A program made the position numbers and the translations under genes. The notes beneath the pieces are model-generated. The model ran no database searches. It was not told where the DNA came from and worked only from the letters and a program-made list of their open reading frames with translations. Shown one piece after another: positions 1,969 to 61,568 of a stretch of 64,000 bases of DNA (the stretch's first letter is position 1; every line of letters begins with the position of its first letter). The DNA lies in contig NIVC01000452.1 of assembly GCA_002269645.1 (NCBI GenBank), forward strand, positions 186,001-250,000. The letters are read 5' to 3'. Source of the DNA: Macrostomum lignano. Taxonomy: Eukaryota.

Positions 1969-4900
1969 TCAGTAGCGACCGCCGCCGCCGGTGAAAGCGG
2001 ACCTGGCTGACGACGTGGCGGCATCGGCGGCCACCCCACGCACGGTCTCGTTAGAGAGAACGCCCTGGCTGAACTCTTGCTTGGCCTTGGCGAAGCTGGC
2101 CCCCGTGCTGCGGTAGATCCTGTGCACCTGTAAGCGCGACGATGATGCACTTGAAGCTGAGACGACACAAACAGACAGATACTGAGACAAACAGCACATA
2201 ATGAGACACAAATAGACAGATACTGAGACACAAATGGACAGATACTGAGACACAAACAGACAGTATAAATTATTGTACGTAGTTTTCAATCGAAACAAGT
2301 TAACACACGGTGCAGTAGCGTACACTCCAAGGTAAAACACGCTGAGTTGGCGGCTGGCACCCCCCATAGCTAGCTGGCAGTTTAGGCTCGGGTTCTGATC
2401 TTTGATGTGCATAGCCTCTAAGATATTCAAAGTGTGCTCATGGCGGCAAGAATCGATAATCTTAAATAAATCAATCGGTTTGCTGTTACAGCATGCAACT
2501 TATATTGTGTATTCAACTTATTACAGGTATATTTATTCAACTGTTTATTAGAATTTTCAATCTCACTACTGCACCGACTATGACCTACAAGTGTCGAAAT
2601 GCATTGGCAATTGAATTAAAGTAAATAAAAACAAGTTAATGTTTGTTCTCTCATTCATTTTATTCCTATTTATTAAGCGAGCTACTCTACCACAAACAGA
2701 CACATAATGAGACACAAACAGACACATAATGAGACACAAACAGACACATAATGAGACACAAACAGACAGATACTGAGACACAAACAGACAGATACTGAGA
2801 CACAAACAGACAGATACTGAGACACAAACAGACAGATACTGAGACAAAAACAGACAGATACTGAGACACAAACAGACACATACTGAGACAAACAGCACAT
2901 AATGAGACACAAATAGACAGATACTGAGACAAAAACAGACAGATACTGAGACAAAAACAGACAGATACTGAGACACAAACAGACAGATACTGAGACACAA
3001 ACAGACAGATACTGAGACACAAACAGACAGATACTGAGACAAACAGACACATACAAGGACACAAACAGAAAGACACAAAGTCGCACTAAAATATACAAGT
3101 CTAAAAAACAAAAGCGCACTAAAATTGATGCTAAGGCACGCACTAATAATTTAAAAAAACACATCATACATTTAATTCACACTACTCACCCGAATAAGTA
3201 GTATCATGTCAAGCACAGCCAGACAGGTGAAGCAGGCGGCGATGAACAGCATGAACCCGGCGGCGCCAAGGTTAGATTTCAGCATGCTGCTGCCGTTAAT
3301 CCAGCCGCACGAGCCCAGATAGTTGAAGCCGAGGCACTGCACAACCAGAATGACGAACTGGACGAAGAACACCAGAAAGAACAGAAAGAAGTTGAAGCTG
3401 CTGTCGTTCCTGCAATTTCGTAGGGGAGTTGGATTTGGGATCTGGGAGTGTGCCAGTGAAACACTGGGGATTTGGGAGTGTGCCTGTGAAACACTGGGGA
3501 TTTGGGAGTATGCCAGTGAAACACTGAGGATCCGGGATAATGCAGTGTACATGCAAGCACTCAATCAGCAAAGCCTCACTTGAACGCCTTGTACAGCGGG
3601 CGAAACCAGCAAATAAAGGAGCAGGGCGGCAGGATGACACACAGCAGCAGAGACACGCCAAACACGGCTCCAGCTGTTGAGGCGTCGGTGCTGGAAGCTT
3701 CAATAAAGTACGCCAGGGTGCCCAGGGTGTTGATTAGTAGTACAGCCACGTGCGCCATCCACAGGTAATAGCCCAGCCTCACAATCCACCGAAACTCCTG
3801 AGAAATTTCCAATTCAAAGTCCTGATAGAAGCAGGGCCCGACAGGGCAGAATGACGGAAGAGGCGGCCAGTTGTTGTTGCGGTCTGGAAGCAGAAATTCA
3901 GGCATTGTGCATAAAGCTAACTGTTGTTTTATTGGATTAAGGGGACAATCTACATCTACTGCTAAACTGGGGATCAGGGGGGGGCAATCTACTGCTGGAC
4001 TGGGGATCAAGGGGGGCAATCTACTGCTGGACTGGGGATCAAAGAGGAGGGGCAATCTACTGCTGGACTGGGGATCAAAGAGGAGGGGCAATCTACTGCT
4101 GGTCTGGGGATCAAAGAGGAGGGGCAATCTACTGCTGGACTGGGGATCAAAGAGGAGGGGCAATCTACTGCTGGACTGGGGATCAAGGGGGGGGCAATCT
4201 ACTGCTGGACTGGGGATCAAAGAGGAGGGGCAATCTACTGCTGGACTGGGGATCAAAGAGGAGGGGCAATCTACTGCTGGTCTGGGGATCAAGGGGGGGG
4301 GCAATCTACTGCTGGACTGGGGATCAAGGGGGGGCAATCTACTGCTGGACTGGGGATCAGGGGGGCAATCTACTGCTGGACTGGGGATCAGGGGGCAATC
4401 TACTGCTGGACTGGGGATCAAGAGGGAGGGACAATCTACTGCTAAACAGGGGATCAAGGGGGGGGCAATCTACTGCTGGACTGGGGATCAGGGGGGGGCA
4501 ATCTACTGCTGGACTGGGGATCAGGGGGGGGCAATCTACTGCTGGACTGGGGATCAGGGGGGGCAATCTACTGCTGGACTGGGGATCAAGGGGGGGACAA
4601 TCTACTGCTGGACTGGGGATCAGGGGGGGGGACAATCTACTGCTGGACTAGGGATCAAAGGGGGGGGGACAATCTACTGCTGGACTGGGGATCAGGGGGG
4701 CAATCTACTGCTGGACTGGGGATCAGGGGGGGGATCAAAGGGGGGGACAATCTACTGCTGGACTGGGGATCAGGGGGGCAATCTACTGCTGGACTGGGGA
4801 TCAAGAGGGAGGGACAATCTACTGCTGGACTAGGGATCAAAGGGTGGGGGGACAATCTACTGCTGGACTGGGGATCAGGGGGGGGGACAATCTACTGCTG

Positions 4901-7900
4901 GACTGGGGATCAAAGAGGAGGGGCAATCTACTGCTGGACTGGGGATCAAAGAGGAGGGGCAATCTACTGCTGGTCTGGGGATCAAGGGGGGGGGCAATCT
5001 ACTGCTGGACTGGAGATCAAGGGGGGGGGCAATCTACTGCTGGACTGGGGATCAGGGGGGCAATCTACTGCTGGACTGGGGATCAGGGGGGCAATCTACT
5101 GCTGGACTGGGGATCAAGAGGGAGGGACAATCTACTGCTAAACAGGGGATCAAGGGGGGGGGCAATCTACTGCTGGACTGGGGATCAGGGGGGGCAATCT
5201 ACTGCTGGACTGGGGATCAGGGGGGGCAATCTACTGCTGGACTGGGGATCAGGGGGGGGCAATCTACTGCTGGACTGGGGATCAAGGGGGGGGACAATCT
5301 ACTGCTGGACTGGGGATCAGGGGGGGGGACAATCTACTGCTGGACTAGGGATCAAAGGGGGGGACAATCTACTGCTGGACTGGGGATCAGGGGGGCAATC
5401 TACTGCTGGACTGGGGATCAGGGGGGATCAAAGGGGGGGACAATCTACTGCTGGACTGGGGATCAAGGGGGGCAATCTACTGCTGGACTGGGGATCAAGA
5501 GGGAGGGACAATCTACTGCTGGACTAGGGATCAAAGGGTGGGGGGACAATCTACTGCTAGACTGGGGATCAGGGGGGGGGACAATCTACTGCTGGACTGG
5601 GGATCAAGAGGGAGGGACAATCTACTGCTAAACTGGGGATCAAGAGGGAGGGACAATCTACTGCTAAACAGGGGATCAAGGGGGGGCAATCTACTGCTGG
5701 ACTGGGGATCAGGGGGGCAATCTACTGCTGGACTGGGGATCAGGGGGGGCAATCTACTGCTGGACTGGGGATCAAGGGGGGGGGACAATCTACTGCTGGA
5801 CTGGGATCAGGGGGGGACAATCTACTGCTGGACTGGGATCAAAGGGGGGACAATCTACTGCTGGACTGGGATCAAAGGGGGGCAATCTACTGCTGGACTG
5901 GGGATCAGGGGGGGGGACAATCTACTGCTGGACTGGGGATCAAGAGGGGGACAATCTACTGCTACTGGGGATCAAGAGGGAGGGACAATCTACTGCTGGA
6001 CTAGGGGATCAAGGGGGGGGGACAATCTACTGCTGGACTGGGGATCAGGGGGGGGCAATCTACTGCTGGACTGGGGATCAGGGGGGCAATCTACTGCTGG
6101 ACTGGGGATCAAGGGGGGGGACAATCTACTGCTGGACTGGGGATCAGGGGGGGGCAATCTACTGCTGGACTGGGATCAAAGGGGGGGGACAATCTACTGC
6201 TGGACTGGGGATCAAAGGGGGGGACAATCTACTGCTAAACTGGGGATCAAGGGGGGCAATCTACTGCTGGACTGGGGATCAGGGGGGCAATCTACTGCTG
6301 GACTGGGGATCAGGGGGGGGCAATCTACTGCTGGACTGGGGATCAGGGGGGGCAATCTACTGCTGGACTGGGGATCAAGAGGGAGGGACAATCTACTGCT
6401 GGACTAGGGATCAAAGGGTGGGGGGACAATCTACTGCTGGACTGGGGATCAGGGGGGGCAATCTACTGCTGGACTGGGGATCAAAGAGGAGGGGCAATCT
6501 ACTGCTGGACTGGGGATCAAAGAGGAGGGGCAATCTACTGCTGGTCTGGGGATCAAGGGGGGGCAATCTACTGCTGGACTGGGGATCAGGGGGGCAATCT
6601 ACTGCTGGACTGGGGATCAGGGGGGCAATCTACTGCTGGACTGGGGATCAAGAGGGAGGGACAATCTACTGCTAAACAGGGGATCAAGGGGGGGGCAATC
6701 TACTGCTGGACTGGGGATCAGGGGGGGGCAATCTACTGCTGGACTGGGGATCAGGGGGGGGCAATCTACTGCTGGACTGGGGATCAGGGGGGGCAATCTA
6801 CTGCTGGACTGGGGATCAAGGGGGGGACAATCTACTGCTGGACTGGGGATCAGGGGGGGGACAATCTACTGCTGGACTAGGGATCAAAGGGGGGGGGACA
6901 ATCTACTGCTGGACTGGGGATCAGGGGGGCAATCTACTGCTGGACTGGGGATCAGGGGGGGATCAAAGGGGGGGACAATCTACTGCTGGACTGGGGATCA
7001 GGGGGGGGGCAATCTACTGCTGGACTGGGGATCAAGAGGGAGGGACAATCTACTGCTGGACTAGGGATCAAAGGGTGGGGGGACAATCTACTGCTAGACT
7101 GGGGATCAGGGGGGGGGACAATCTACTGCTGGACTGGGGATCAAGAGGGAGGGACAATCTACTGCTAAACTGGGGATCAAGAGGGAGGGACAATCTACTG
7201 CTAAACAGGGGATCAAGGGGGGGCAATCTACTGCTGGACTGGGGATCAGGGGGGGGCAATCTACTGCTGGACTGGGGATCAGGGGGGGCAATCTACTGCT
7301 GGACTGGGGATCAAGGGGGGGGGACAATCTACTGCTGGACTGGGGATCAGGGGGGGACAATCTACTGCTGGACTAGGGATCAAAGGGGGGGACAATCTAC
7401 TGCTGGACTAGGGATCAAAGGGTGGGGGGACAATCTACTGCTGGACTGGGGATCAGGGGGGGGACAATCTACTGCTGGACTGGGGATCAAGAGGGAGGGA
7501 CAATCTACTGCTAAACTGGGGATCAAGAGGGAGGGACAATCTACTGCTAAACAGGGGATCAAGGGGGGGCAATCTACTGCTGGACTGGGGATCAGGGGGG
7601 GGCAATCTACTGCTGGACTGGGGATCAGGGGGGCAATCTACTGCTGGACTGGGGATCAAGGGGGGGGGGACAATCTACTGCTGGACTGGGGATCAGGGGG
7701 GGACAATCTACTGCTGGACTAGGGATCAAAGGGGGGGACAATCTACTGCTAAACTGGGGATCAAGGGGGGGGGCAATCTACTGCTGGACTGGGGATCAAG
7801 GGGGGGATAGCGAAGGGTCAGAAGCAATTCTGAAAGAGACACAAAGTCAGTCTTACATCCGCCAGAGCCACCGGCCTGCATTTCCTGTTCCCGTCGCCGT

Positions 7901-10900
7901 TGTTCCTCCTCGCGGCGCTCCAGCTCCCTGGCCTTGGCCTCCAGTTCTCGTTGGCGCCGTTCCAACTCCTCCGAAGTGACACGCTGCTGGGCGCTGGCAC
8001 TGTAGGCAGGCGGCGGCTGCTGCTGCTGCTGCTGACTAGAAGGCAGCACAGCCGGCTGACTTGGCGGCTGCTGTTTGGCTGATTTGTCAAACGGATTGAA
8101 TTCGTCTGTTGGTCGCTGGGCTGGCTGGCTGCCGCCACTGCCGCCGCGGGCCTGCTGAACTGATGCATCCTGGTTGGTTTGGATACGAGTCTTGGTTTAC
8201 AACAGTTATAAATGACTATAATATTTAGCCATAAATAAAGAGTTTTCTCTATTTAGGCATGTGATTGATTTCAGAAAAAGCTCAACCGATCCTCATAAAA
8301 CTGGCACCATTCAATTGGAAATTTTTCTAGCAATGGTACATGTGATGTGGCTAAGAAATTGCTCAATGCTAAAGGGATTAAATACTTGAAAAATATGCTT
8401 TTAGCAAAGGTCAAGCATACTTTTTGACTTGAAATGAATTTTAAATAGTATATTTTAATATAGCACAATCAGGACACAGGTGATAGCTATTCTCCTTTTG
8501 GCTAAGACCTAGAAAAGTTCAAGGCAAGACAAAGTGTATTTTAGCCAAAATATAGGCCTGCCCTCTCTGCCCTCCCCTTGTATCTTCACCTCTAGAAACT
8601 GCCCTTTTTATTAAATCTTTTGCTGCAAAGCAAAAACAAATTAAGTTGCTTTCAGCTGTCATGATGAGCTACTCAGATATATGGGCTTATGGTATCAGTT
8701 TGATCAATAGTTCCATAGTCTCAGCTCCTTAGACTGGCTAGCCATGGTTAACAGGTTAAAAAGAATCCAAAAGTTAATATTCAAGACTTTTCCTGCTTTG
8801 TGGAACTTGGAAGAATAACAGTGAACAAAATTTCAAATAAGGAATTGCACTTTTGAAGTGTTTCTGCTGCTTGGCTTCCCTATGCGCCCTTTCTAAAGAA
8901 AACAAGCTTGTAGGCTTTTTAACAAGGGCATGGAAAGCTTTTGCTACAAGTATAAGATGAAAGATAAGACATGGGTATACCTAAACAGCTTTGGTATAAA
9001 CAAGGGCATAGCTACTATTTTTTTCAAGGGTGTTGATTTTTACTCCTAGGTTCTGAACTTTTGCTTAGAAAGTTAAATACACTATCAATTTTCACTTTTG
9101 CATAAATATTCTATGCCAAACTGCACCAGCATGGTAGACTGTGCCTGTATTGCTAGGGGCCAATCTATGCTAGATACTATCTACAATAAGGGCCATTTGC
9201 TGCAATAGGGTCATCAACCATATTTAGCAACTGCAATAAAAATTGAGAAGCTACTTTGTAGTATATAAGAAGTCTTGATAAAGTTAGCTTAAAAATAATT
9301 GTTTAACAACTTATTGACCAATACTAAGCTACAATCAGCTATCCTATAGAATGTTTGTTAAATTAATTTTTGCTTGATTCAACCCCAACAAGTGAACAAA
9401 CTAACAATTAATATATGCTAGCAACTAAATTGTTTGTTATATCTCTATAGGTGGCACAATCCAACTTAAAACTACTAGTTGTCTAGCCATCTAGACAATC
9501 TAAATCAAAAAAGTAAACGATAGCTTGAGTTGAATACCAGTATTAGTAGCTTAGCAGCTAATTTTTCAATTTCAAATACATCTCTTTTTAAAGGTCCCCT
9601 TTTATTGTCACAGCCTTTTGACCATAGACATGTTTTCATGCTTTATACATGCAAAACTGATATTATTTCAAGAATTCCTAATATATATATCAATGCGAAA
9701 ATTCAAATTGAATAGAGATATATTGTAGATAAAATTACCTAGTCATATTATTACTTTATGGTAAAGTAGTAGGAGCCTAACCTTATATTTAATTATGGCA
9801 ATTGACTATAACAAATAATTTATTTATTAGTACATGATAAACTGTTACTTTGTTTACTTTTTTATATTTTTAGACTTTAAAAATGAAAACAATCAAATTC
9901 AAGCAAAAAGTTAATGATTAGGCCTAATGAATGCTTCTATAAGATCTAAAAAGCCAACTGTGTAGTCTCCCTTAATACAATCAGTGTTGGGTACCATTAA
10001 TGAAAATCTTAATTTCCATTAATGGGAAGAGCATTAGTGTTAAAAAATATTAACTTATCAACTTTTAACTTCATTAAGTTAACTGAAAGTTAACTGATAA
10101 TTGTTAATTTTAATTTGTTAAAGTTAACACAAAAATATAGAAACCTTGCACATTTTTATAATACACTGTCTTTGCTTTCCCCTTTTTAGCAAAACATAGA
10201 GGTCATCTAAAGGATTTACAAGCTAAAAAGTAATAAATAATAATTTAAAAAACTTGTTTATATAATACTACTAAATTAAGCATATATGATATAATTAAAG
10301 TAGTAACTTTTTTATTTGAAACTTGAAAACTCATCTATAATTTTGCAACTTTTTTAAACTTATATTTTTGTTTTTTCTTTGCATCTTTGGTCATTGACAT
10401 TTCCATTAACATTAATGATGAATTTGTTATTAACTCACAAAGTTATTAATGCAAATTTGTTAGTAAATTTGTTTAAAAATCTTAATGGTAGTCCATTAAC
10501 ATTAGGCCCTAATGAAAAATCTTAACACTTATTAATGTTTATTAATGGATTAATGTTTATTAACACTAATAGACTAGTGCCTAACATTGAATATAATCAT
10601 AACTCAGTTATTTAAGTCTAGCATACCATACAGTGCACCATCCCCACATTTTCATTGGAGCTGCAGTATGTGAATGATACACAAATATATAATCTTAAAA
10701 ATATGCAAAGACAAATATATATGCAACCTCATTGCATTTGGCATATAGCCACAAGTATGCAACCCCCAACCCCATTTTAGATACATATAAAAGCCAGCGG
10801 CATAAAATAAAACTTTTATTGGGCCTACATTGCATAAATTAACATCTATCTAGATAAGGCCTAATTGTTAAATTAAATCCTGAATATAGCTTGTATATAC

Positions 10901-11443
10901 ATTGAAGCATGCATTGAAGCTTGTGCCCCATGCCATGCCCATAGTATGGCTTTCTCCAAAATGACTTGCCAAACTTTCTCCAAAATGACTTTTGCCTTAA
11001 TGTCTTTTTGGGTATCTTCAAGTTTCGTTCGTTTAATTCCAACCACCCTTGAATAGAGGGCGAAATAATTCCGGAAATAATTAAACAAACGAAACTTGAA
11101 GATTGCCATCTTTTTGCCTATGTGACCTACACCCTATGATCACCTACCCACCATATACTAAACTTAGAAGCCTGTAATTAATTGATACAACACTAAGCAT
11201 TAAAAAATTCCAACCCCAAAGCCCACTAGAGGCCTATTGTGAAAAGGCTTTGTCTACATTTCAACTATAGCTAGTCCTACTCACTCCTAATCAATGACAA
11301 TGTTATTATATGGTCAAGACTTCCCAGATAGTTAAAGCAGGATAGATAGACGTTATATACTTTTTCACTTAGGCTAAGGCACTTACCATGAATGGATTGC
11401 TATCTGATGATGGTTCAGCAAATGGGTTGTCAAAAGTAGACAT
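1969..11443 (-). CDS. SCAMP: Secretory carrier-associated membrane protein (SCAMP), 5 coding exons, 350 aa
   Basis: Exons (minus): 11443-11387 ([19 protein letters not shown], donor GTAAGT), 8169-7857 (DASVQQAR...DEFNPF...coiled coil [21 protein letters not shown]), 3883-3580 ([21 protein letters not shown]...[11 protein letters not shown]), 3409-3190 ([13 protein letters not shown]3-4), 2127-1969 ([25 protein letters not shown]). All introns are GT-AG with matching phases (0,1,2,0); total 1053 nt. Three NPF motifs, NWPP and the E-peptide [10 protein letters not shown] are SCAMP hallmarks. Confidence 0.96.
2158..3075. repeat. 22-bp minisatellite in two blocks (2158-2270 and 2694-3075), SCAMP intron 4
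   Basis: Unit GAGACACAAACAGACAGATACT, with a CATAAT variant. Confidence 0.95.
3434..3535. repeat. 30-bp minisatellite, about 3.5 copies, SCAMP intron 3
   Basis: Unit GGGATTTGGGAGTGTGCCAGTGAAACACTG. Confidence 0.9.
3945..7807. repeat. 3.9-kb G-rich 28-32-bp minisatellite with higher-order structure, SCAMP intron 2
   Basis: Unit CAATCTACTGCTGGACTGGGGATCA(A)G(n). The marker variant TAGGGATCAAAGGGTGGGGG recurs near 4830, 5525, 6405, 7062 and 7410. Confidence 0.97.
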
Positions 11444-12685: not shown

Positions 12686-13650
12686 CTCACGAGAGATTGC
12701 TCGGATTGTCAGGGACTCACAAGAGATTGCTCAGATTGTCGGGACCTCACAAATTCACAAGAGATTGCTCAGATTGTTGGGAACTCACAATATATTGCTC
12801 AGATTGTCAGGGACTCACAAGAGATTGCTCAGATTGTCGAGAACTCACAAAGTCACAAGAGATTGCTCAGATTGTCGGGAACTCACAAAGTCACAAGAGA
12901 TTGCTCAGATTGTCGAGAACTCAGTCACAAGAGATTGCTCAGATTGTCGGAACTCACAATATATTGCCCAGATTGTCAGGGACTCACAAGAGATTGCTCA
13001 GATTGTCAGGGACTCACAATATATTGCTCCGATTGTCAGGGACTCACAAGAGATTGCTCAGATTGTCAGGGACTCACAATATATTGCTCCGATTGTCAGG
13101 GACTCACAATATTGCTCAGATTGTCAGGGACTCACAAGATATTGCTCAGATTGTCGAGAACTCACAAAGTCACAAGAGATTGCTCAGATTGTCAGAGACT
13201 CACAAGATATTGCTCCGATTGTCAGGGACTCACAATATATTGCTCAGATTGTCAGGGACTCACAAGAGATTGCTCAGATTGTCAGGGACTCACAAGATAT
13301 TGCTCCGATTGTCAGGGACTCACAATATATTGCTCAGATTGTCAGGGACTCACAAGAGATTGCTCAGATTGTCAGGGACTCACAAGGTGTTGCTCCGATT
13401 GTCAGGGACTCACAAGAGATTGCTCAGATTGTCGAGAACTCACAAAGTCACAAGAGATTGATCCGATTGTCAGGGACTCACAAGATATTGCTCAGCTTGT
13501 CAGGGACTCACAAGATATTGCTCAGATTGTCAGGGACTCACAAGAGATTGCTGAGATTGTCAGGGACTCACAAGAGATTGCTCAGATTGTCAGGGACTCA
13601 CAAGGTATTGCTCAGCTTGTCAGGGACTCACAAGATATTGCTCAGCTTGT
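12686..13650. repeat. 30-bp minisatellite just upstream of CIAO2B
   Basis: Unit ATTGCTCAGATTGTCAGGGACTCACAAGAG, with 39-bp variants. Confidence 0.96.
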
Positions 13651-13706
13651 TAAAAATGGCATACTGTCTCTCAGATTCCAGCAGCAGTGCGCCTATACAC
13701 TACGCC

Positions 13707-14372
13707 ATGGACAATGCCAACCCAGTTGTGTACGCCAGGACTACCGAGCGTCCAATAACGCCTGGCATGCTTAACGAAGACCTTGCTGATCAGTTCGATG
13801 CTCGCGAAGTATTCGACTTAATCCGGGTTATCAACGATCCGGAGCATCCGCTAACGCTAGAAGAGCTCGGCGTTGTCAGCGAGGCTGCCGTTCAGGTTGA
13901 TGATCCGGCCAATCGGATTAGCATAGAATTCACGCCGACCATCCCGCACTGCAGCCAAGCGACTCTCATCGGTCTGAGCATTCGGGTCAAGCTGATCCGG
14001 TCGCTGCCCTCGCGCTTCAAGGTTTGTAAAAAAGTTTAATGTTACTTAGATTTGTGCGCGTATATTTCTACTGTTTCTACTGTTAGTAGACTAAAGGGAA
14101 AAGTTTTTACTTATTATGATCTTTGTCTTTTATTATAGCTATAGTAGATTTCTTAAGATTAAGAGGTCGCTTGTATAACTATTGCGGGCTGGATACGTTG
14201 ATTTATTATACGAGCTATATTGCTAATATATACGGATAGATAGTTTGGTACTTTGTTGATAGATAGATAGATAGATAGACAGATAGATAGATAGACAGAT
14301 AGATAGACAGATAGACAGATAGATAGATAGATAGATAGATAGACAGATAGATAGACAGATAGATAGATAGAC

Positions 14373-14407
<35 letters not shown>

Positions 14408-14615
14408 CAGATAGTCCCAACTCCACTGCAAGTAATAAATATCGAAACTCCGCCCCAACCAACAGGTAGGCGTCCGAATCGCTCCGGGCACGCACAACTC
14501 TGAGGAGGCGATTAACAAACAGCTAGCCGATAAAGAGCGCGTGGCGGCCGCTCTGGAGAATACCCACCTTCTGGCTGTTGTCAACCAGTGTCTGGGTGAA
14601 ATGCGCGAGCACTGA
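13707..14615 (+). CDS. CIAO2B: Cytosolic iron-sulfur assembly component 2B (MIP18/FAM96B), 2 exons, 154 aa
   Basis: Exon 13707-14021 MDNANPVVY...[28 protein letters not shown]...[31 protein letters not shown], phase-0 intron, exon 14466-14615 [32 protein letters not shown]...TGA. Family motifs [16 protein letters not shown] and [15 protein letters not shown] are present; the ENANP-like N-terminus favours CIAO2B over CIAO2A. Confidence 0.95.
14258..14414. repeat. (GATA)n/(GACA)n microsatellite in the CIAO2B intron
   Basis: Mixed GATA/GACA tetramers. Confidence 0.97.
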
Positions 14616-15214
14616 GTGTTCGGTTAAGAATTATTTATTACAATTTGGGGTTAGATTTCTTTGTTAGAAATCCAATGTCCAGCAATCAATTTGGAATTTG
14701 TAAATCTTTTTGGAATCCTTGATTTGGAATTGGGAGTCGTGTTTGGAATCCCTGGGATTTCGAATCCATAGCTCGTGCTCTTTGTGAATTGTAAATTGTC
14801 TCATATTTTTTTCCATAACGTGACTAATTTCATATTTTCGCTTCCGTATCTGGCATATTAGATTGGTGTAATCTTTTCCAATTAAATGTCAACCTGTTGT
14901 TCTGCTATATTATAAACCGGCCCTACAAATAGCAGTCAAACTTAATCATGATTCGTTCCGATCGTTCGTTAACATTTCTTTAAGCAAAGAAAGCATTTTC
15001 GCATGCTTGAATGCTTGAATAAATTGACACAATACACTATCCTAACATTGGTACAGATACTTTGAGAGCCTGCTCAAATTGTACAAGCTTTGTTTTTTGT
15101 TTACATGCTCCAAAAAAATTAATAGCTAAGTATAAATTAGTTTTATAGTTGTTAGCTTAGTATTTTTTTATTTTCATATCCCTTTAACGACTATTATACC
15201 CCAATTTCCAATCG

Positions 15215-15490
15215 ATCATACAGCATCAAATCATACAAGATCAAGTCTTACGAGATCCAGTCGTACAAGATCAAATCGTACTACATCAAATCATAAAAGA
15301 TCAAATCGTACAACATCAAATCATGCAAGATCAAGTCGTACAATATCAAATTAAAGAAGAACAAACCGAACAAGATCAAATCATACAAGAAAAAACCTTA
15401 GAAGATCAATTTATGCAAGATCAAATCATACAAGATCAAGTCGTACAAGATCAAATCGTACGAGAGCAAATTATACCAGATCAAATCATT
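15215..15490. repeat. Degenerate 15-bp tandem repeat
   Basis: Unit approximately ATCAAATCGTACAAG, about 18 copies. Confidence 0.85.
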
Positions 15491-15574
15491 TAAAATCATC
15501 ACTGCAAACCAAATCAATATACACACAGTACACCCGTGTGTGCACAGCCTTTAAAATCTGATTTTGAGAAAATT

Positions 15575-15627
15575 TTGGTTCAACTTGCAGTCAACGCGGA
15601 TACAACACCGCATCAATACTCATTAAA
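15575..15627 (+). promoter_or_regulatory. Splice acceptor 37 nt upstream of the XRCC4-like ATG (5' UTR intron or trans-splice site)
   Basis: TTTTGGTTCAACTTGCAG| ends at 15590; no coding donor partner was found upstream. Confidence 0.45.
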
Positions 15628-18600
15628 ATGTCATTTGACCGCCTGGTGAAGCTCTCCGGCCTCGACTCGCTGCTCTTGCCAGCTGGCGGCGGGTTCAGTC
15701 TAATTGGCGAGCTGCGCGACTCCGCGCTCTGGCTGTCTCTGTCCGACGGCGATGCCGTCTATTGCGCCAAAATTGACCGGGCCGAGCTGGCCGAACTGCG
15801 TGTCCAATTGGGCCTGGAAGACGATTCTAGCGTATTCAGCGCTGTGAGGTGCGTGCACGTTCTCAGTAGTTTCTTGATTTTCAACGGTTTTTAGGATATT
15901 TTGTTACTTGTAGGCTATTAGTGTATTGGATTTATAAATTACACATGCATGTACATGTAGCTAGGAATCTGTGGGCTGCGGCAACTGTGCCAGCCTAAAG
16001 AGTTAAACTAAAGAATATTTCGATCATTATTAAGACTGACGATCATAGAATAAAGTAAAGTAGTATGACGCGCGCGCGCGCTACGCTCGATTTCTTAGAT
16101 ACAAACTGGAGCTGGCCGGTAAAAAGGTATAACGCTCTCGAGAATAAGGTTTTCGAAAGGTAGACATTTTCTGTGGAGAAAAATCTGATTTAAGGTTATT
16201 TGCATCTCACTTGCACTGGTCCTGCTACATGTAGATAGATTTTGAAACGGACGAAGATTTCTCTAACCCGAAGCCTTACCCTCGCTAGCCGATATAGCAT
16301 CATTGACGCTTGTATTGCACTCCTCAATTCCGGATCCGCCTAGATGCTCCACAGCCGACCGTAAACGCTCGTTACACTTTGTCCTCGACATCTCCAGGAT
16401 GAAAAATTTCATCAGCCGCTAGATCCAACTTGGTGAACTCGTCCATCTCTTTCAGAAACATAAATCATTGCAGGTCCGCTGCAGGAACTCCCAAGTTTGT
16501 TTTTTTCGCCTCATGCAACTCCTTAAACGTACATGTAGCTCTAACTATCATTCGCTCGCATTTCTTTAAGGTGCTTGGTAGAATTAAATGACTTTGCAGA
16601 AAATGTAGACTTAGTAGCGAATATTTCTGACTCTTCTTCATTTCTCCTCTTAACTTACGAGCTATATCTCTCTGAGTGTGTTCAGTACATGGAGGAAAGA
16701 ATAGAATGGAGTGCTAATCTGAGCCAGTTATTTTTATCTCGCTCGATTTTCGCTTTTAACATCCCTTTCCCCCCCGTTCCTTCCTATTGGCTGAAAGCAT
16801 ATTTTGATGCGAGCTCATATTATGCTGGGACAGACCTTTCAGAGGGGAACGAAAACGAAAACGAGACGAAAAATACTTTGTCTATGGCAGTCACGAGCCA
16901 ATAGGAAAGAACGGGGGGGAAGGGATGTTAAAAGCGAAAATCGAGCGAGATAAAAATAACTGGCTCAGATTAGCACTCCATTCTATTCTTTCCTCCATAG
17001 TTCAGTACTGTTGGCCACAGAATATACTGTTGGCTTTAAACGTTGGTGGCCATAGAAAAACGATTATTTAAACAAAATGAGTTAAATATACTAGGGTCAG
17101 GGTGTATGGCTTCTGATTCAATGAAGAATTAGACCATAGGCAGCAAAACCAATTTTGGTATCCAAGATATGTTTGCCATAGTAATGGAGCGATTTGGTCC
17201 ATAGATCTTATATTCTCTAGATAGGCCCCTTGGTATTGCAGCAATAGGGAAAGTCCGACCGCTGTTTTTCGTCACTTGTGCGACAAAAGCCAACATGGGT
17301 TGCTAAAATTTTGATTTCAGTAGCTTAGGGACATAGGGACATGAATAAAATAAAAAGCTACTCCATCAAACTTAGACTGATGCATGCACTGCAGAGACTA
17401 CTGATTAAATTGAGTTCAGTGGCTAGTTGATTTTTGAGCTGTCACGAGTTGCAAAATTTTTAACGTTAGCTTCTATGGCCACATAAGTGGTTAATGAGTG
17501 GCCCATCTTGTGTATATATGATCTTTGATTGAAGCTATCGGCTATTTGTTAGTCCAACAAGCATCTATTTGGTTCATAGCAGCTGAACGAGCTACAGTTT
17601 CATCCCTAGGTTTTCATTTAGACAGACTGTCACAAGCAGTGGGGACGAGAGCAATGCTTCATTTGCAGCGGCGAAGCACGGTCAGTCCCAGAATCGTGGA
17701 CCATATGCTAGATTGTCAAACGAACGCCATGGGCTTGTGATCGAAGCCGAGTTTTGAGCTAGCTAAAAAAACTGTGTGCCAAATAGTTTGATGTTAGAAT
17801 TTTCAGTCTCAGTTTTATCAGTCGCGGACTAGCTGCTTGTATGCTTTGATTAGAAAATCTCTGTTTACACTAGAAGGATTTTGTTTTTGTCCTTTCTGGA
17901 GTAGAAATCGCTCTTTGCAAAAAACAAGTTTCATACACTAAAGCTGCTTGTAAAAAAATAGGTAGCTGAGAAAATCAAATGAAAGCAGCTCTTGTAATGC
18001 TATTCTTTACAGAAGTCATGATTTACAAACAGTTAACTGTTTAACTAGCACAAAGCATCGCTGATACTATAGTGTTCAGGCACGATTCTCATTTGCCTGT
18101 AATATTTTTGTGCAATTTTAGCCTTTACACAGTTGACCCGCAGAAGTTTGCAGATTACTCAAATTTGTCCACGACTTGAAGGTTGGTGGTTCGATTCTTG
18201 ACACTCAGAACAATCTGTGTCCTTAAGCAAGACACTTGACTCTGCAATTGCTTCAGTTCACCCAGCTGTAAAATGGGTGCCAGCATTAGCTGGGGTATTT
18301 GAAAGTGTGTGGCGAACCCCTCCCAGTCTATGGACCGAACAGCCGTACACAGCCTTCAGATGCGCTGCGCAATAGCTGCGGCTGAGCTGTCGGTTGCACA
18401 TCTGCCTATTAGAGCAGGTGAAAGCAATTATTAATTTTATTATTACCAGTGGTAAATTTTCATATCCCCTTCAATACACTCCCTACACAGGGCAGCACTT
18501 CTTTGCCAGAAACTGCCGCAGCCGCCGCCGTTGCGACCGTCTGAGTCGCCGCCGGCTTTGATCTTGCCGGTTCGTGGCTGCTCCATTCGGCTGCTGCCCG

Positions 18601-18779
18601 CTGACGATCCGGCGCCAATTAGGCGCCATCTGCTCACCCTGTTAGCCAGACGCGCCGTGGCCGCAGCTGCTGAGCTGTCAGAGCTTCAGAATCAGCAGCC
18701 AGTGGCTGACATGGCCGAGCAGGAGGAGCAGGTCGGAGAGGATGTGAGTCAGTTCAGTCGAGAAGCGTCTTCTGGCTGA
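15628..18779 (+). CDS. XRCC4/XLF/PAXX-superfamily head-domain protein (about 169 aa if exon 2 is terminal)
   Basis: Exon 15628-15848 (donor AG|GTGCGT, phase 2) joins acceptor TACACAG|G at 18491 in frame: ...LWLSLSDGDAVYCAKIDRAELAELRVQLGLEDDSSVFSAVR/AALLCQ...GCSIRLLPADDPAPIRRHLLTLLARR. This parallels recalled XRCC4 motifs (ITLTDG..AW, LRKALL, GSFNLEKVENPAEVIRELI) and PAXX motifs. A possible further donor GTGAGT lies at 18744. Confidence 0.6.
16688..16999. mobile_element. 312-bp MITE with ~105-bp TIRs and 8-bp TSD (P-element-like termini)
   Basis: CATGGAGGAAAGAATAGAATGG... and ...CCATTCTATTCTTTCCTCCATA are near-perfect inverted repeats, flanked by GTTCAGTA at 16680-16687 and 17000-17007. Confidence 0.85.
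18150..18443 (+). mobile_element. tRNA-derived SINE family 1 (CORE-like central domain)
   Basis: B-box GGTTCGATTC, central TGTGTCCTTAAGCAAGACACTT...CACCCAGCTGTAAAATGGGT, (ATT)n tail; four copies in the window. Confidence 0.85.
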
Positions 18780-18899
18780 TTTATGACAATGAGTCGAAGA
18801 TCAAGGACCACTGATAGTAAGAGGCGGTCGCACTGCAAAATTGAGTGAGCCTGATTTCGCTTAAAAATGCATTTGCAGGATGGGAACTTTTCAGCCATT

Positions 18900-19142
18900 T
18901 ATACTGCAATATACACATGGAAGTTGGCATTACGTTGGAAGCAATGACCATTAAGGAACACTTCGTTATATATATAGAAAGAAGTTATAGTGTGGAAAGG
19001 CACGGTTGGAGAGGGTTTATGCTGAGGGAGGGGTAAGAGCCAATAAATGAGTCTTGGCTTTAAAATACAATAAAATGCTTCTGTTTAACTTGCTACTGAA
19101 CTGAAAGTAGCCCAAATGTGCTGAGATGGCCCATCTAGCTAT
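18900..19142 (+). mobile_element. MITE family A partial copy
   Basis: GGGGTAAGAGCCAATAAATGAG...CTACTGAACTGAAAGTAG...GGCCCATCTAGCTA matches the right half of the copies at 46080-46196 and 47240-47345. Left limit approximate. Confidence 0.7.
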
Positions 19143-27431: not shown

Positions 27432-30400
27432 ATGCAGCCATATTTAGGTACCAGCCAATCTAATGGCACTTGTGCCACTTCATTAAGTGGACCAACTTCT
27501 AATAGTAGTGCTATGGACGAGCAGCAAATGGACCTGCTGCTAAGTGTTATCAATGACCAGCAGCAGCAGCCGCAGACTCCGCAGTCTCAACAGTCCAGCC
27601 TTAATGGCGTCCAAGCGGCAAGTCCAGTGCAGCAGCAGCAACAGCAACAGTCTCAGCAGTCATTGCTTCAGCAAGCTCACCAATCTGAGCAGCCTGTTGT
27701 TAGCAATTCCACCTTAACCAATCTGCTGCAGCAAATTCTTCAGCAACAACAACAGCAGCAGCCGCAGCAGCAGCAGCAGCAGCAGCCAGCTTTGTCACTG
27801 CAGCCGGCCACTGCTAGTCAGCTGGCTTACGCCTGCGGCGGCTCTTCAGACTTGAGCAACCTGTTGCAGGCTTTGGCTAGCCAGACTGCTCAAATGCAAT
27901 CGGTTATTTTAGCTTTGTTAAAGCAACAGCATCAGCAGCAGCAGCAGCAGGTGCATCTGCTTCAGCCTCAGCGTCTCGTTCCAGCAGCCAACGATAGCTT
28001 TTTGAAAACCCTGATCGCCGAACTGGAGGTCAAGGCCGAGCCTCCTGAACAGCAGCGCCAATTGACGCCTTCCACTGTGTCAGCCTCTCTGCCTGCCAGC
28101 TCGACTCTCCGGTCAATCTTAACAGACTCTTCTACCTCAGCCGCTATCGGCCGCTATGCTGCACCGCCAGCTGCTTTGAATCTCTGGCAGCATCAGCAGC
28201 AGCCTGCCGAACAGCAAATGCAGCAACAACAGCTTCCATCTGCAGATCAGCTGATATCTCTCTCTAGAGAAGGTGAGAAGTATTGTTTGTGCTGTTGGCG
28301 AATGGGTTTTACAATGCATATTTTTGGCCACGCACTGGCCCAATGACTTCCTGGCCACTCGTGTTAGGGTATAAGTTGAAGTTCATGTGTCAGGGTTTAG
28401 GTTAGGGCTCATGTTAGGGTTTAGGTTAAGGTTCTTATGTTAATGTTTAGGTTGGAGTTTAGGTTGGGGTTTAGTTTAGGCTTTTTGTGTTGAGGTTTAG
28501 GTTAGAGTTAGGGTTAGGACTCTTGTGTTAGGGTTTAGGACAAGGTTAGGGTTTAGATTTAGGTTAGGGTCGGCAGTCGTGGCCAATGCACATTAAGACT
28601 TAACCAGATCAAACGCGAATGATATTTAAACTGAATATAAATATATTTTAGCGCAACCGTCCCAGTGTCTTGTGGCGCCAGTCAGCGCCTCCGCCATCAC
28701 CGTAGCTTCATCGTCTTCGTCTGCGCCGCCTCCGGATGTCGTCGGTGCCACCGGCGGCGGTAGCAGCAGCGGCGGCGGCGGCGGCAACTACAAGTACAAG
28801 CGGGCCCGCGTCTCCGACACTGCCATGTCGTCCTCGTCATCGCCGGCCAGCTCCTCGTGCACGTCGCCCGCCCGAAGCCGGTCGCCAATAACCGTGGTGG
28901 ATTCGGACACCCAGTTGTCAAGTATTAGACGCGACTGCGGCGAGTTGTTCCTCGGATCGGCATCCGAGGAAGAGCCCGGCATTCTGTCTGGCGAAGCGTC
29001 CAGTCTGCGGTCTGAATTGCTGAAGCGGCGGAACTCCGCTGCCGCCGCGGCCGCTGCTGCCGCTGCCGCTTCGGGCTCCAGCTTCGGTGGCGGCCAAGAC
29101 AGGCAGGCTTCGTCTATTGAATACGGCAGCGTGTCCAGGTTGGCTGCTCTTGCATATAGTGCTTAATCCTTGCTACTGTTTTTTGATTGAAGTACTTGCT
29201 GGGCCAGCCTCCCAGATCCCACAGTTGCTGGGCCAGCCTCCCAGATCCTCAGTTGCTGGGCCAGCCTCCCAGATCCTCTGTAGTTGCTGGGCCAGCCTCT
29301 CAGATCCTCAGTTGCTGGGCCAGCCTCCCAGATCCTCAGTTGCTGGGCCAGCCTCCCAAATCCTCTGTTGCTGGGCCAGCCTTCCAAATCCTCAGTTGCT
29401 GGTCCAGCCTTCCAGATCCTCAGTTGCTGGGCCACTCATCCTCTCAGATCCTCAGTTGCTGGGCCACTCATCCTCTCAGATCCTCAGTTGCTGGACCACC
29501 CTCTCCAGTTGCTGGGCCAAGAGCAAAACCAGATTAAAACAAATTTTATCCTATCTTTTTTAGCCCTTCCTAACCTAATCTCCGCATTCTATTAATAAGC
29601 CAAATTCAAATTTACTCAACCGTGTCACAATTGAAAACAGCCTCACTTAATCCGAATCTCCACCCGTATCGCAGCTGCAGGTCAGACGAGGTCACCTCTT
29701 CCCCTGCATCGGTGCACACGAACTTTTCTGGCGACGCAGGCAGCGATAGGCGCCGGTCTGGCAAGCCCAGCCTATTCAACTGCTATCCGAGGAAGCACGG
29801 CCCATTCGAACTGCTAATCGTCTCCCAGCCCGAGCAGCACCACCGGGCTCGGTACATGACCGAAGGCTCGCGCGGCTCGGTTAAGGATCGGTCGCAGCAG
29901 GGCTACCCCACTGTGCAGGTGAGCGGCTTCCTAGTAGATTCTTGGGTAGAGCTGTCCATCCTGTCATTAGCCTCAGGTAGAGCTGCCAACCCTGTCATTA
30001 GCCTCAGATAGAGCTGTCAACCCAGTCATTAGCCTCAGGTAGAGCTGTCAACCCAGTCATTAGCCTCAGGTAGAGCTGTCAACCCTGTCATTAGCCTCAG
30101 GTAGAGCTGTCAACCCTGTCATTAGCCTCAGGTAGAGCTGTCAACCCTGTCATTAGCCTCAGGTAGAGCTGTCAACCCTGTCATTAGCCTCAGGTAGAGC
30201 TGTCAACCCTGTCATTAGCCTCAGGTAGAGCTGCCAACCCTGTCATTAGCCTCAGGTAGAGCTGCCAACCCTGTCATTAGCCTCAGGTAGAGCTGTCAAC
30301 CCTGTCATTAGCCTCAGGTAGAGCTGCCAACCCTGTCATTAGCCTCAGGTAGAGCTGTCAACCCTGTCATTAGCCTCAGGTAGAGCTGCCAACCCTGTCA

Positions 30401-39400: not shown

Positions 39401-39820
39401 TCTGCGCACTACAGCGCCGCCTCCGCAGCCAGTCAGGAGCTTCTGCCTGACCTTGGCAACTCGGCTATGGACTGGAATGTCAGCCTACAGCCAGCCGAGC
39501 AGACGGTTGATCATCAGCAGGTTGGCGGAGGCGGCGCCAGCGCTGTCGGCTTGCCGCTGCCCGCCTGGTCTCCGGTCACCGATCCGACTGTGGCGGTGCC
39601 GGCTCAGGCCGCGGTGGCTCCGGCGTCAACCGCCGCTTCTTACATGCAGCTGAGCAGCCAAGTGCTGGACTCTCTGTTCAACGGCGCCACAGGCGTCAAT
39701 TCGGACTCGGTGGCAGTCTCAGCCGAGGCAGTCGGACCCGAGTCTGTCGACGTGCTGTCTAACGCCGTACCGACGTCAGCGGCCGGCACAGTTGACGATT
39801 CGTCCGTTTTTATGCTGTGA
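27432..39820 (+). CDS. NFAT5: NFAT5/TonEBP-like Rel-homology (RHD + IPT/TIG) transcription factor, 8 exons, about 950 aa
   Basis: Exons 27432-28272 (Q-rich), 28652-29138 (S-rich), 29675-29918 ([37 protein letters not shown]), 35638-35831 ([35 protein letters not shown]), 37048-37220 ([15 protein letters not shown]...ARLVFRV), 38198-38512 (IPT: [17 protein letters not shown]), 38675-38785, 39333-39820. Phases match, 2853 nt. [16 protein letters not shown] is the NFAT5-type recognition loop (NFATc has RAHYETEG). The first and last exon limits are less certain. Confidence 0.92.
28320..28590. mobile_element. Degenerate TTAGGG/TTTAGG-rich element with 9-bp inverted ends (Helentron/HINE-like?) in NFAT5 intron 1
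   Basis: TTGGCCACG (28324-28332) and CGTGGCCAA (28578-28586) bracket about 200 bp of GGTTAGGGTTTA-like repeats. Confidence 0.4.
29197..29520. repeat. 28-bp minisatellite, NFAT5 intron 2
   Basis: Unit CAGTTGCTGGGCCAGCCTCCCAGATCCT. Confidence 0.93.
29948..30803. repeat. 31-bp minisatellite, about 27 copies, start of NFAT5 intron 3
   Basis: Unit GTAGAGCTGTCAACCCTGTCATTAGCCTCAG. Confidence 0.97.
31975..32542. repeat. 23-bp minisatellite with higher-order unit
   Basis: GTGGCGCCGGAATGAGTAACTGT, periodically interrupted by GGAATTGGTAATCTGGTGGCTCT. Confidence 0.93.
32997..34592 (-). mobile_element. Mariner (Tc1/mariner DD34D) transposon, inactive, in NFAT5 intron 3
   Basis: Start [14 protein letters not shown] at 34409, HTH region, WVPH mutated to *VPH (TAG), SGDESW, LHQDN, YSPDL, and a C-terminus [16 protein letters not shown]. 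Contains frameshifts and a 310-bp internal duplication. A 5' TIR-like TA|CGAGGGGTATTCAATAAGTT lies at 34571-34592; no matching 3' TIR was found. Confidence 0.93.
34660..35195. repeat. Degenerate GATCGG-based tandem repeat
   Basis: GGGATCGAGGGTT(A/T)TCGGGATC-type units. Confidence 0.85.
35310..35592 (+). mobile_element. tRNA-derived SINE family 1
   Basis: GGGGGTTCGATTC B-box, CORE-like body, AAT/ATT tail ending about 45 nt before NFAT5 exon 4. Confidence 0.85.
36255..36508 (-). mobile_element. tRNA-derived SINE family 2
   Basis: Minus-strand head AGCCCAGTGGTCTAGCGC...GACTCGATCCC. The body GCAGAGCCAAGCCGAGATTCCAATTTAGCCCCAAATT recurs at 24290-24330. Confidence 0.7.
37235..38060. repeat. About 38-bp C/A/T-rich minisatellite, NFAT5 intron 5
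   Basis: Unit ATAATCCCATTACGATAATCCCCAACTATCCCACTCCG, degenerate at both edges. Confidence 0.92.
38853..39290. repeat. 22-bp minisatellite, about 20 copies, NFAT5 intron 7
   Basis: Unit GAGAGCGGAGAATGCACTGGGT. Confidence 0.97.

Positions 39821-50891: not shown

Positions 50892-61568
<10,677 letters not shown>

What the first reader, a model, noticed from the sequence alone, without database searches (positions are those of the whole stretch)
15628..18779. Unannotated-looking XRCC4/PAXX-like NHEJ factor
Seen: two exons splice in phase to a ~169-aa protein. Recalled motif comparison: LSLSDGDAVY~ITLTDGHSAW, VRAALL~LRKALL and SIRLLPADDPAPIRRHLL~SFNLEKVENPAEVIRELI (XRCC4), with LAELRVQLGL~LAALKARFGL (PAXX). 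The short helical tail is more PAXX-like than XRCC4-like, but the PAXX C-terminal Ku-binding motif was not found. PAXX is mainly characterised in vertebrates, so an invertebrate PAXX-like or truncated XRCC4 paralog would be notable. SAS-6 and CCDC61 share the fold and are not excluded.
Basis: partly seen in the sequence, partly recalled or inferred. Interest (0 to 1): 0.7.

Follow-up and report, generated by a model that had tools for sequence, protein, structure and literature searches.

The report
Unannotated flatworm PAXX-like gene lacking Ku motif
The two exons form a real, unannotated gene of the flatworm Macrostomum lignano whose small protein has the fold of the DNA-break-repair scaffolds XRCC4 and PAXX. 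It is a diverged second copy of the worm's PAXX-like gene and has lost the tail motif that PAXX uses to bind Ku.

Summary
ATG 15628, exon 1 15628-15848, a GT..AG intron, and exon 2 18491-18779 join in phase to a 169-aa ORF. The exons are 61-63% GC against 41% in the intron.

The window is Macrostomum lignano contig NIVC01000452.1. No gene is called here or in the two other assembly copies, although all three keep the ORF, the splice sites and the stop.

An exhaustive HMMER search of 1.8 billion proteins found one relative, M. lignano Mlig032148g3 (E 5.6e-9, 38% identity). It spans both exons and has its intron at the same position and phase. Its C-terminus carries a PAXX-type Ku-binding motif (Pfam PAXX, E 0.004).

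An AlphaFold2 model built without any PAXX or XRCC4 sequence gives a beta-sandwich head with an inserted helix-turn-helix and a 29-residue stalk. All 50 listed Foldseek PDB hits belong to the XRCC4 superfamily. XRCC4 has the best E-value; human PAXX has the best TM-score and identity.

No Ku-binding motif was found anywhere in the window.

Verdict: this is a PAXX-lineage paralog without the Ku-binding motif. Expression and function are untested. PAXX outside vertebrates was already reported, so interest is moderate.

The parts
15589..15590 (+). AG of a possible 5' (spliced-leader trans-splice) acceptor, ttgcag|TCAACG, 37 nt upstream of the ATG
   Evidence: Sequence. In the paralog locus L001 the annotated mRNA starts right after ttttcag. 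About 30% of M. lignano genes are SL trans-spliced (PMC8629364). This is an inference, not tested.
15628..15848 (+). Coding exon 1: residues 1-73 plus 2 nt of codon 74. Encodes strands beta1-beta4 and the helix-turn-helix of the head domain.
   Evidence: GC 0.61. Aligns to P0001 residues 8-81. AF2 secondary structure.
15849..18490 (+). Phase-2 intron (2,642 nt), GT..AG. It contains a palindromic MITE-like insert and a dispersed repeat.
   Evidence: The paralog gene in L001 has an intron at the same position and phase (GG|G against AG|G).
18491..18779 (+). Coding exon 2: residues 74-169 and the TGA stop. Encodes a Pro-rich loop, the last two head strands (res 97-110), the stalk helix (res 114-142, 18609-18695) and an acidic low-confidence tail (res 143-169).
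   Evidence: GC 0.63. The stop is conserved in L002 and L004.
18744..18749 (+). Unused or alternative donor-like site GTGAGT. The exon would end at 18743 in phase 0.
   Evidence: Sequence only. No downstream exon with a Ku-binding motif was found.
19042..19074 (+). Two AATAAA hexamers (19042, 19069), 263-290 nt after the stop. Candidate polyadenylation signals.
   Evidence: Inference only.
13707..14615 (+). Upstream same-strand neighbour CIAO2B/MIP18 (FeS_assembly_P), CDS exons 13707-14021 and 14466-14615. Its stop lies 1,012 nt before the ATG at 15628. It identifies the organism and may be an operon partner.
   Evidence: The 154-aa product matches UniRef A0A1I8JKJ1 of Macrostomum lignano exactly. 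NCBI gene call in L003.

Best explanation
This is an intact but unannotated two-exon gene of the flatworm Macrostomum lignano. It lies on contig NIVC01000452.1 at about 201,628-204,779 (window coordinate + 186,000). It encodes a 169-aa XRCC4-superfamily protein made of a beta-sandwich head with an inserted helix-turn-helix, a short stalk helix of about 29 residues, and an acidic, probably disordered tail.

It is an old, diverged paralog (38% identity) of the worm's PAXX-like gene Mlig032148. That gene has the same exon-intron layout and carries a PAXX-type C-terminal Ku-binding motif. The window gene has lost that motif.

Shown here: the gene model, the fold class, the paralogy, the conserved intron, the absence of the motif, and retention of the ORF in three assembly copies.

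Inferred mechanism: like PAXX, it dimerises through head and stalk. Lacking the motif, it cannot dock on Ku70 by itself. It would therefore act either as a heterodimer partner or modulator of canonical PAXX (leaving one Ku-binding tail per dimer) or through head-domain contacts with another end-joining scaffold, as plant PAXX does with XRCC4. It may be transcribed with, or just downstream of, CIAO2B and receive a spliced leader at the AG at 15589-15590.
For: Gene model.

Paralogy: the only homolog among 1.84 billion representative proteins is P0001, M. lignano BOX15_Mlig032148g3. E 5.6e-9, query residues 1-137, spanning the splice junction.

Conserved intron: same position and phase 2 in both genes.

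Paralog is PAXX-like: P0001 residues 176-206 (PGMSLLNPMQRKRPAARGVVL) match Pfam PF15384 PAXX positions 160-190 of 194 at E 0.0042. hhalign of the two-protein profile against 24 mammalian PAXX gives probability 79.7%, E 1.5e-5, colinear from head to motif.

Fold: the AF2 model came from a two-sequence alignment holding no PAXX or XRCC4. The core has pLDDT 70-89. Topology is four strands, a helix-turn-helix, two strands, then helix 114-142. In Foldseek against the PDB, all 50 listed hits are XRCC4 superfamily. XRCC4 reaches E 5.9e-5. Human PAXX has the highest TM-score (0.46/0.56) and identity (22-25%). The motif-bearing paralog gives the same ranking pattern.

Head-only hhalign controls: PAXX P 0.0075 (26% identity), XRCC4 P 0.039, XLF P 0.65.

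Organism: exact match of the neighbouring CIAO2B protein, and the window is 100% identical to L003.

Retention: L002 and L004 keep the ATG, splice sites, 169 codons and stop. There are no indels in the CDS, against 13-15 gap openings in the intron. dN/dS is about 0.36.

Context: M. lignano has DNA-PKcs (PMC8021618).
Against: - There is no transcript evidence. The gene is missing from NCBI's gene calls on this assembly at all three loci and from every protein collection searched.
- Evidence for constraint among the three copies is weak: 6 synonymous against 6 nonsynonymous changes, binomial p 0.07. CDS mismatch is 1.4-1.8% against 1.9-2.0% in the intron.
- The window protein alone gives no Pfam hit, no PDB sequence hit and no significant BLASTP match to human PAXX.
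- Foldseek E-values rank XRCC4 above PAXX.
- The model is of medium confidence (mean pLDDT 67) and shows only two strands after the helix-turn-helix. A Pro-rich loop sits where human PAXX aligns with a further stretch of sequence.
- Dimerisation, heterodimerisation and any role in end joining are untested.
Confidence: 0.6

Rival explanations
1. It is a silent or decaying duplicate. The ORF is a young-looking relic of a PAXX-like duplicate that is no longer expressed or is under relaxed constraint, having already lost its Ku-binding tail.
For: It is not annotated at any of the three loci in NCBI's gene calls for this assembly. Nonsynonymous changes equal synonymous changes among the copies, and the CDS substitution rate is close to the intron rate. 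The family's functional motif is missing.
Against: The ORF, both splice sites, the start and the stop are intact in three copies. There are no indels in 510 nt, where about 3 would be expected at the intron rate. At 38% identity to its paralog it still keeps a foldable core pattern and the intron phase, which implies long selection after the duplication. GC3 is 0.68 and there is a sharp exon/intron GC contrast.
Confidence: 0.2
2. It is a truncated XRCC4 paralog rather than a member of the PAXX lineage.
For: The best Foldseek E-values go to XRCC4 chains (5.9e-5 against 1.7e-2 for human PAXX).
Against: The motif-bearing paralog P0001 shows the same XRCC4-first Foldseek ranking, so that ranking does not separate the subfamilies. 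The only sequence relative carries a PAXX-type motif, not an XRCC4 tail. Head-only hhalign favours PAXX (score 21.5, 26% identity) over XRCC4 (18.3, 21%). TM-score and identity are highest for PAXX. The stalk ends near residue 142, so there is no counterpart of the LIG4-binding segment. Pfam XRCC4 does not hit at E up to 10.
Confidence: 0.1
3. The true product is longer. The 18743 donor joins a downstream exon that supplies a Ku-binding motif or another C-terminal module, and the 169-aa form is a minor or artefactual model.
For: There is a good donor consensus, GAT|GTGAGT, 33 nt before the stop. The paralog is 75 residues longer.
Against: In the paralog the tail and motif are encoded in the same second exon, with no further intron. 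A motif HMM over all six frames of the 64-kb window, tblastn with the paralog tail, and a regex scan all found nothing credible.
Confidence: 0.07
4. It is a centriolar SAS-6 or CCDC61 family protein.
For: SAS-6 and CCDC61 heads appear among the Foldseek hits (E 1.2e-2 to 2.2e-2).
Against: Their TM-scores are lower (0.30-0.38). The protein has only 169 residues and a 29-residue stalk, whereas in the Foldseek alignments the window model matches only the head and the start of the coiled coil of the SAS-6 and CCDC61 chains, which continue well beyond the crystallised fragment (from general knowledge). The paralog has a PAXX-type tail.
Confidence: 0.02

Closest known systems
Macrostomum lignano hypothetical protein BOX15_Mlig032148g3 (P0001, 244 aa, contig NIVC01000006.1)
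   Same: Same genome. 38% identity over residues 1-137. Same start context (MSF/MSL), the same two-exon layout with a phase-2 intron at the aligned codon, the same predicted head with helix-turn-helix and stalk, and the same Pro-rich loop after the helix-turn-helix.
   Different: P0001 continues for about 100 more residues: a second short helix, a Gly/Ala linker, a PAXX-type Ku-binding motif (PGMSLLNPMQRKRPAARGVVL) and a charged tail. The window protein stops after a 27-residue acidic tail with no motif. P0001 is annotated and the window gene is not.
Human PAXX (C9orf142; PDB 3WTD, 3WTF, 4WJA, 7ZWA)
   Same: A small protein with an XRCC4-type head and a short stalk. It gives the best TM-score (0.46/0.56) and identity (22-25%) of all PDB hits. 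hhalign is colinear at 26% identity over 99 columns. LWLSLSDGDAVY...LAELRVQLGL aligns with FNLYVTDAAELW...LAALKARFGL.
   Different: The window protein has no C-terminal Ku-binding motif. It gives no Pfam PF15384 hit. A Pro-rich loop sits where human PAXX has a further stretch of sequence in the alignment. Pairwise BLASTP is not significant.
Human XRCC4 (PDB 1FU1, 1IK9)
   Same: Same head fold with the best Foldseek E-value, 5.9e-5.
   Different: The XRCC4 stalk is far longer and carries the DNA ligase IV binding segment. Here the helix ends near residue 142 and the protein at 169. Identity (16-19%) and TM-score are lower than for PAXX. Pfam XRCC4 does not hit.
Non-vertebrate PAXX orthologs already described: Arabidopsis PAXX (PDB 8P26), with sea urchin and sponge PAXX, C. 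elegans NHJ-1 and ciliate Die5p
   Same: They show that PAXX-fold proteins are widespread outside vertebrates (bioRxiv 10.1101/2023.05.26.542399). AtPAXX is a Foldseek hit (E 4.7e-3).
   Different: [quoted passage not shown] This protein has none. No flatworm PAXX, and no PAXX paralog lacking the motif, turned up in the literature searched.

Membership tests
XRCC4 superfamily (XRCC4, XLF, PAXX, SAS-6, CCDC61) | N-terminal beta-sandwich head with a helix-turn-helix inserted between strands | tested here: met
   The AF2 model has strands 17-19, 23-30, 33-39 and 44-49, helices 51-61 and 66-78, then strands 97-101 and 104-110. All 50 listed Foldseek PDB hits are superfamily members at probability 0.89-1.00. 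The model is of medium confidence (core pLDDT 70-89).
XRCC4 superfamily (XRCC4, XLF, PAXX, SAS-6, CCDC61) | Alpha-helical stalk directly after the head, mediating a parallel coiled-coil homodimer | tested here: inconclusive
   A helix at 114-142 is predicted directly after the head. Dimerisation could not be modelled or assayed with these tools.
PAXX (Pfam PF15384) | Short stalk (about 30 residues) and small size (about 200 aa) | tested here: met
   The helix at 114-142 is 29 residues and the protein is 169 aa.
PAXX (Pfam PF15384) | Sequence-profile match to the PAXX family | tested here: inconclusive
   The window protein alone has no Pfam hit at E up to 10, and BLASTP to human PAXX is not significant. 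Head-only hhalign gives P 0.001-0.0075 for PAXX, against 0.039 for XRCC4 and 0.65 for XLF. The profile with the paralog against mammalian PAXX gives 79.7% probability and E 1.5e-5, driven largely by the paralog's motif.
PAXX (Pfam PF15384) | C-terminal Ku-binding motif (P-KBM, human residues about 177-204, PGESLINPGFKSKKPAGGVDF) | tested here: not met
   A motif HMM over the six-frame window, tblastn and a regex scan found nothing. The ORF stops at 18779 in all three assembly copies. The motif is present in the paralog P0001 (Pfam PAXX E 0.0042).
PAXX (Pfam PF15384) | Direct binding to Ku70/80 on DNA and stimulation of end joining | not testable with these tools
   This needs pull-downs, end-joining assays, or RNAi with irradiation.
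XRCC4 (Pfam PF06632) | Long coiled-coil stalk carrying the DNA ligase IV BRCT-linker binding segment (human residues about 155-195) | tested here: not met
   The predicted helix ends near residue 142 and the tail is acidic and low-confidence. There is no Pfam XRCC4 hit.
XLF/Cernunnos | Fold-back helices after the stalk and a basic C-terminal Ku-binding motif | tested here: not met
   hhalign P 0.65. No XLF chain is among the 50 listed hits for the window model. There is no basic C-terminus.
SAS-6 / CCDC61 | Very long coiled coil after the head | tested here: not met
   169 aa in total with a 29-residue helix. Foldseek E is 1.2e-2 or weaker, with TM-scores of 0.30-0.38.

The most novel reading that the evidence does not exclude
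M. lignano keeps, besides a canonical PAXX, a dedicated PAXX paralog that lacks the Ku-binding motif. This paralog would be expressed, possibly as the downstream gene of a CIAO2B operon. It would tune end joining by forming heterodimers with only one Ku-binding tail, or by using its head to contact XRCC4 or XLF, which would make it a natural 'PAXX delta-KBM' regulator. From memory, this animal is known for regeneration and high radiation tolerance.
Probability: 0.25. Interest if true: 0.55.

Novelty: new variant of a known kind. Interest (0 to 1): 0.4.

Why it matters
PAXX function is understood almost entirely through its C-terminal Ku-binding motif. What the head and stalk do on their own is still unclear. 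A naturally retained paralog that keeps head and stalk but has dropped the motif, next to a canonical copy in the same genome, would be a natural separation-of-function allele. M. lignano supports RNAi and transgenesis and also has DNA-PKcs (PMC8021618).

The finding also adds a missing gene to the M. lignano annotation. It gives sequence-level evidence for a PAXX-type gene pair in flatworms, a group for which the literature searched here reports none. The gain is modest, because PAXX orthologs outside vertebrates are already known and nothing here shows expression or function.

Tried and rejected
- Pfam scan of the 169-aa protein found only YBL010C/LAA2 at E 0.13.
- phmmer against PDB sequences found only C/EBP bZIP noise at E 0.66.
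- The word-indexed homolog search found nothing, not even the protein itself.
- The A1 profile against PDB sequences found nothing relevant.
- BLASTP against verified human PAXX was not significant.
- The PAXX homolog search listed only mammals among its best 120, so no invertebrate PAXX profile could be built.
- The search for a downstream Ku-binding exon failed by three routes. The [LIVM][LIVM]NP regex gave one weak site at 24425 (KVVNPRTASGALLKFF*) inside a GC-rich stretch, with no basic patch, and I rejected it. tblastn with the paralog tail gave nothing. The motif HMM had its best hit at E 0.043 on the wrong strand at about 35,100.
- The +1 frame of 18710-18811 (HGRAGGAGRRGCES...) weakly resembles the paralog's Gly/Ala-RR linker. 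I rejected it as a low-complexity coincidence. All three assembly copies agree on the frame, so an assembly frameshift is unlikely.
- There is no synteny between the window and the paralog locus L001.
- Rfam found no RNA family in the window.
- Foldseek E-value ranking does not discriminate between subfamilies, because the motif-bearing paralog also ranks XRCC4 first.
Full report
**1. The observation**

- An ATG at 15628 follows in-frame stops. Exon 1 (15628-15848, 221 nt) ends at a good donor (GAG|GTGCGT).
- An acceptor (ctacacag|G) opens exon 2 at 18491. The frame closes at TGA 18777-18779.
- The spliced CDS is 510 nt and encodes 169 aa.
The exon would end at 18743.
- The exons are 61% and 63% GC. 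The intron is 41% and the flanks are 32-39%. This is the sharp contrast expected of real exons in this genome.

**2. The organism and the annotation status**

The same-strand upstream neighbour is a CIAO2B/MIP18 gene with CDS at 13707-14021 and 14466-14615. Its 154-aa product is an exact match to a Macrostomum lignano UniRef entry.

Fetching the loci that encode it showed that the window is 100% identical to contig NIVC01000452.1 of assembly GCA_002269645.1 (L003; window coordinate = contig coordinate - 186,000).

Two further copies of the locus exist, on NIVC01002080.1 (L002) and NIVC01004785.1 (L004).
- In none of the three does the NCBI annotation call a gene downstream of CIAO2B.
- The 169-aa sequence is not in the 15-billion-protein collection.
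- A word-indexed search found nothing.
- The exhaustive search found no representative above 38% identity.

So 'unannotated' is correct for every collection I could query.

**3. Relatives**

HMMER against 1.84 billion representative proteins returned one real hit, P0001 (E 5.6e-9, 38% identity, query residues 1-137).
- P0001 is 'hypothetical protein BOX15_Mlig032148g3' of M. lignano itself. It is therefore a paralog.
- The alignment runs straight across the proposed splice junction.
- The P0001 gene (locus L001) also has two coding exons. Its intron splits the aligned codon in the same phase: GG|G there, AG|G here. This is independent support for the exon join.
- The paralog's second exon continues for about 100 more residues and contains PGMSLLNPMQRKRPAARGVVL. 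That stretch matches the C-terminal part of the Pfam PAXX model (PF15384 positions 160-190 of 194, E 0.0042, 17.1 bits against a 25-bit cut-off). It lines up with human PGESLINPGFKSKKPAGGVDF, including the V and F/L positions.
- hhalign of the two-flatworm profile against 24 mammalian PAXX sequences gives 79.7% probability and E 1.5e-5. The match is colinear from the head to that motif.

**4. Fold**

AlphaFold2 was run on an alignment holding only the window protein and P0001, so no PAXX or XRCC4 information was supplied.
- Mean pLDDT is 67, with the core at 70-89.
- The model has four strands, a helix-turn-helix (51-61, 66-78), a low-confidence Pro-rich loop, two more strands and a 29-residue helix (114-142).
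- In Foldseek against the PDB, all 50 listed hits are XRCC4-superfamily chains. XRCC4 reaches E 5.9e-5. Arabidopsis PAXX is at 4.7e-3, SAS-6 at 1.2e-2 and CCDC61 at 1.6e-2.
- Human PAXX is at 1.7e-2 but has the best TM-scores (0.46/0.56) and identity (22-25%).
- The paralog's model behaves the same way. XRCC4 is first by E-value, while PAXX has the lowest rmsd (4.4-4.6 A) and the highest target-normalised TM-score. The E-value order therefore does not separate the subfamilies.

Head-only hhalign controls used sequences verified against the PDB.

| Template | Score | P | Identity |
|---|---|---|---|
| PAXX | 21.5 | 0.0075 | 26% |
| XRCC4 | 18.3 | 0.039 | 21% |
| XLF | 10 | 0.65 | not reported |

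On its own the window protein gives no Pfam, PDB-sequence or BLASTP signal.

**5. The missing Ku-binding motif**

Three searches failed to find a PAXX-type motif anywhere in the 64-kb window: a motif HMM over all six frames, tblastn with the paralog tail, and a regex scan. The two other assembly copies have the same stop codon, so the short C-terminus is not an assembly frameshift. The tail (QNQQPVADMAEQEEQVGEDVSQFSREASSG) is acidic and was modelled with low confidence.

**6. Is it maintained?**

All three copies keep the ATG, both splice sites, 169 codons and the stop.
- The CDS has no indels, while the intron has 13-15 gap openings in about 2.25 kb.
- Twelve codons vary, 6 synonymous and 6 nonsynonymous. 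dN/dS is about 0.36 and the binomial p is 0.07.
- CDS mismatch is 1.4-1.8%, against 1.9-2.0% in the intron.

This is suggestive, not conclusive. The stronger argument is the deep one. At 38% identity to its paralog the protein still has a foldable XRCC4-type core and the same intron phase. A long-dead copy would not keep either.

**7. Most likely mechanism (inferred)**

By analogy with PAXX, the protein should dimerise through head and stalk. Without the motif it cannot bind Ku70 on its own.

Two options seem most plausible:
- It heterodimerises with Mlig032148, giving dimers with a single Ku-binding tail.
- It acts through head contacts with XRCC4 or XLF, as reported for plant PAXX (bioRxiv 10.1101/2023.05.26.542399).

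An AG at 15589-15590 lies 37 nt before the ATG. This mirrors the paralog, whose annotated mRNA starts right after an AG. [quoted passage not shown] The gene lies 1,012 nt after the CIAO2B stop, and about 340 nt of that is a minisatellite. An operon with CIAO2B is therefore possible but untested.

**8. Comparison with what is known, and novelty**

An early paper stated that PAXX is absent from most invertebrates (PMC4339890). Later work reports orthologs across Filozoa except insects and nematodes, and then in C. elegans (NHJ-1), ciliates and plants. M. lignano also has DNA-PKcs (PMC8021618). A flatworm PAXX is therefore expected rather than surprising.

What is new here:
- an unannotated second family member;
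- its loss of the family's signature motif;
- its retention in three assembly copies.

I file it as PAXX-lineage by descent, not as a PAXX in the functional sense, because the Ku-binding motif was tested and not found.

**9. Verdict**

Novelty is 'new variant of a known kind' and interest is moderate (0.4). Expression and function are open. RNA-seq mapping is the cheapest decisive test.

Noticed in passing
window 15190-15528: A 15-bp minisatellite (about 23 units) lies directly upstream of the gene, between the CIAO2B stop and the ATG at 15628. It inflates the intergenic distance that matters for the operon question.
   Followed up: partly
window 16689-17024 (intron): A palindromic MITE-like element with 86-nt arms, 99% complementary. 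It is present only in this copy of the locus and absent from the sister copies L002 and L004, so it is a recent insertion.
   Followed up: partly
window 18119-18402 (intron); L002 and L004: The sister copies carry an extra segment of about 237 bp at window 18119-18122. Window 18170-18402 recurs at 74-77% identity at other positions in the fetched flanks (which of L002-L004 was not resolved), which suggests a dispersed repeat.
   Followed up: no
window 3576-7722, 12697-13774, 38616-39409, 40022-40956, 56510-57454, 59148-60083, 62532-63131: Long minisatellite arrays stay open in several frames and produce spurious ORFs of 200-400 aa. One array runs right up to the CIAO2B start.
   Followed up: no
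window 13707-14615 (+); L002, L003, L004: The CIAO2B/MIP18 gene is present in three assembly copies. One amino-acid difference (R/Q at DDPAN[R/Q]ISIE) separates L002 from the other two. A SCAMP gene is called on the minus strand upstream, at window about 3677-11443.
   Followed up: partly
window 38062-38604 (+): An exon with a Rel-homology dimerisation / IPT-TIG domain (Pfam RHD_dimer, E 3e-21), NFAT/Rel-like. The Q-rich ORF at 27432-28346 may belong to the same gene but has no Pfam hit.
   Followed up: partly
window 44009-45496 (+) and 50892-52043 (+): An ORF with a secretin-family 7TM match (7tm_2, E 3e-6) and an ORF with a Major Facilitator Superfamily match (MFS_1, E 6.5e-26).
   Followed up: partly
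window 33073-33660 (-): A 195-aa ORF that looks by eye like a mariner/Tc1-type transposase fragment. Pfam gave no hit at E 0.001.
   Followed up: partly
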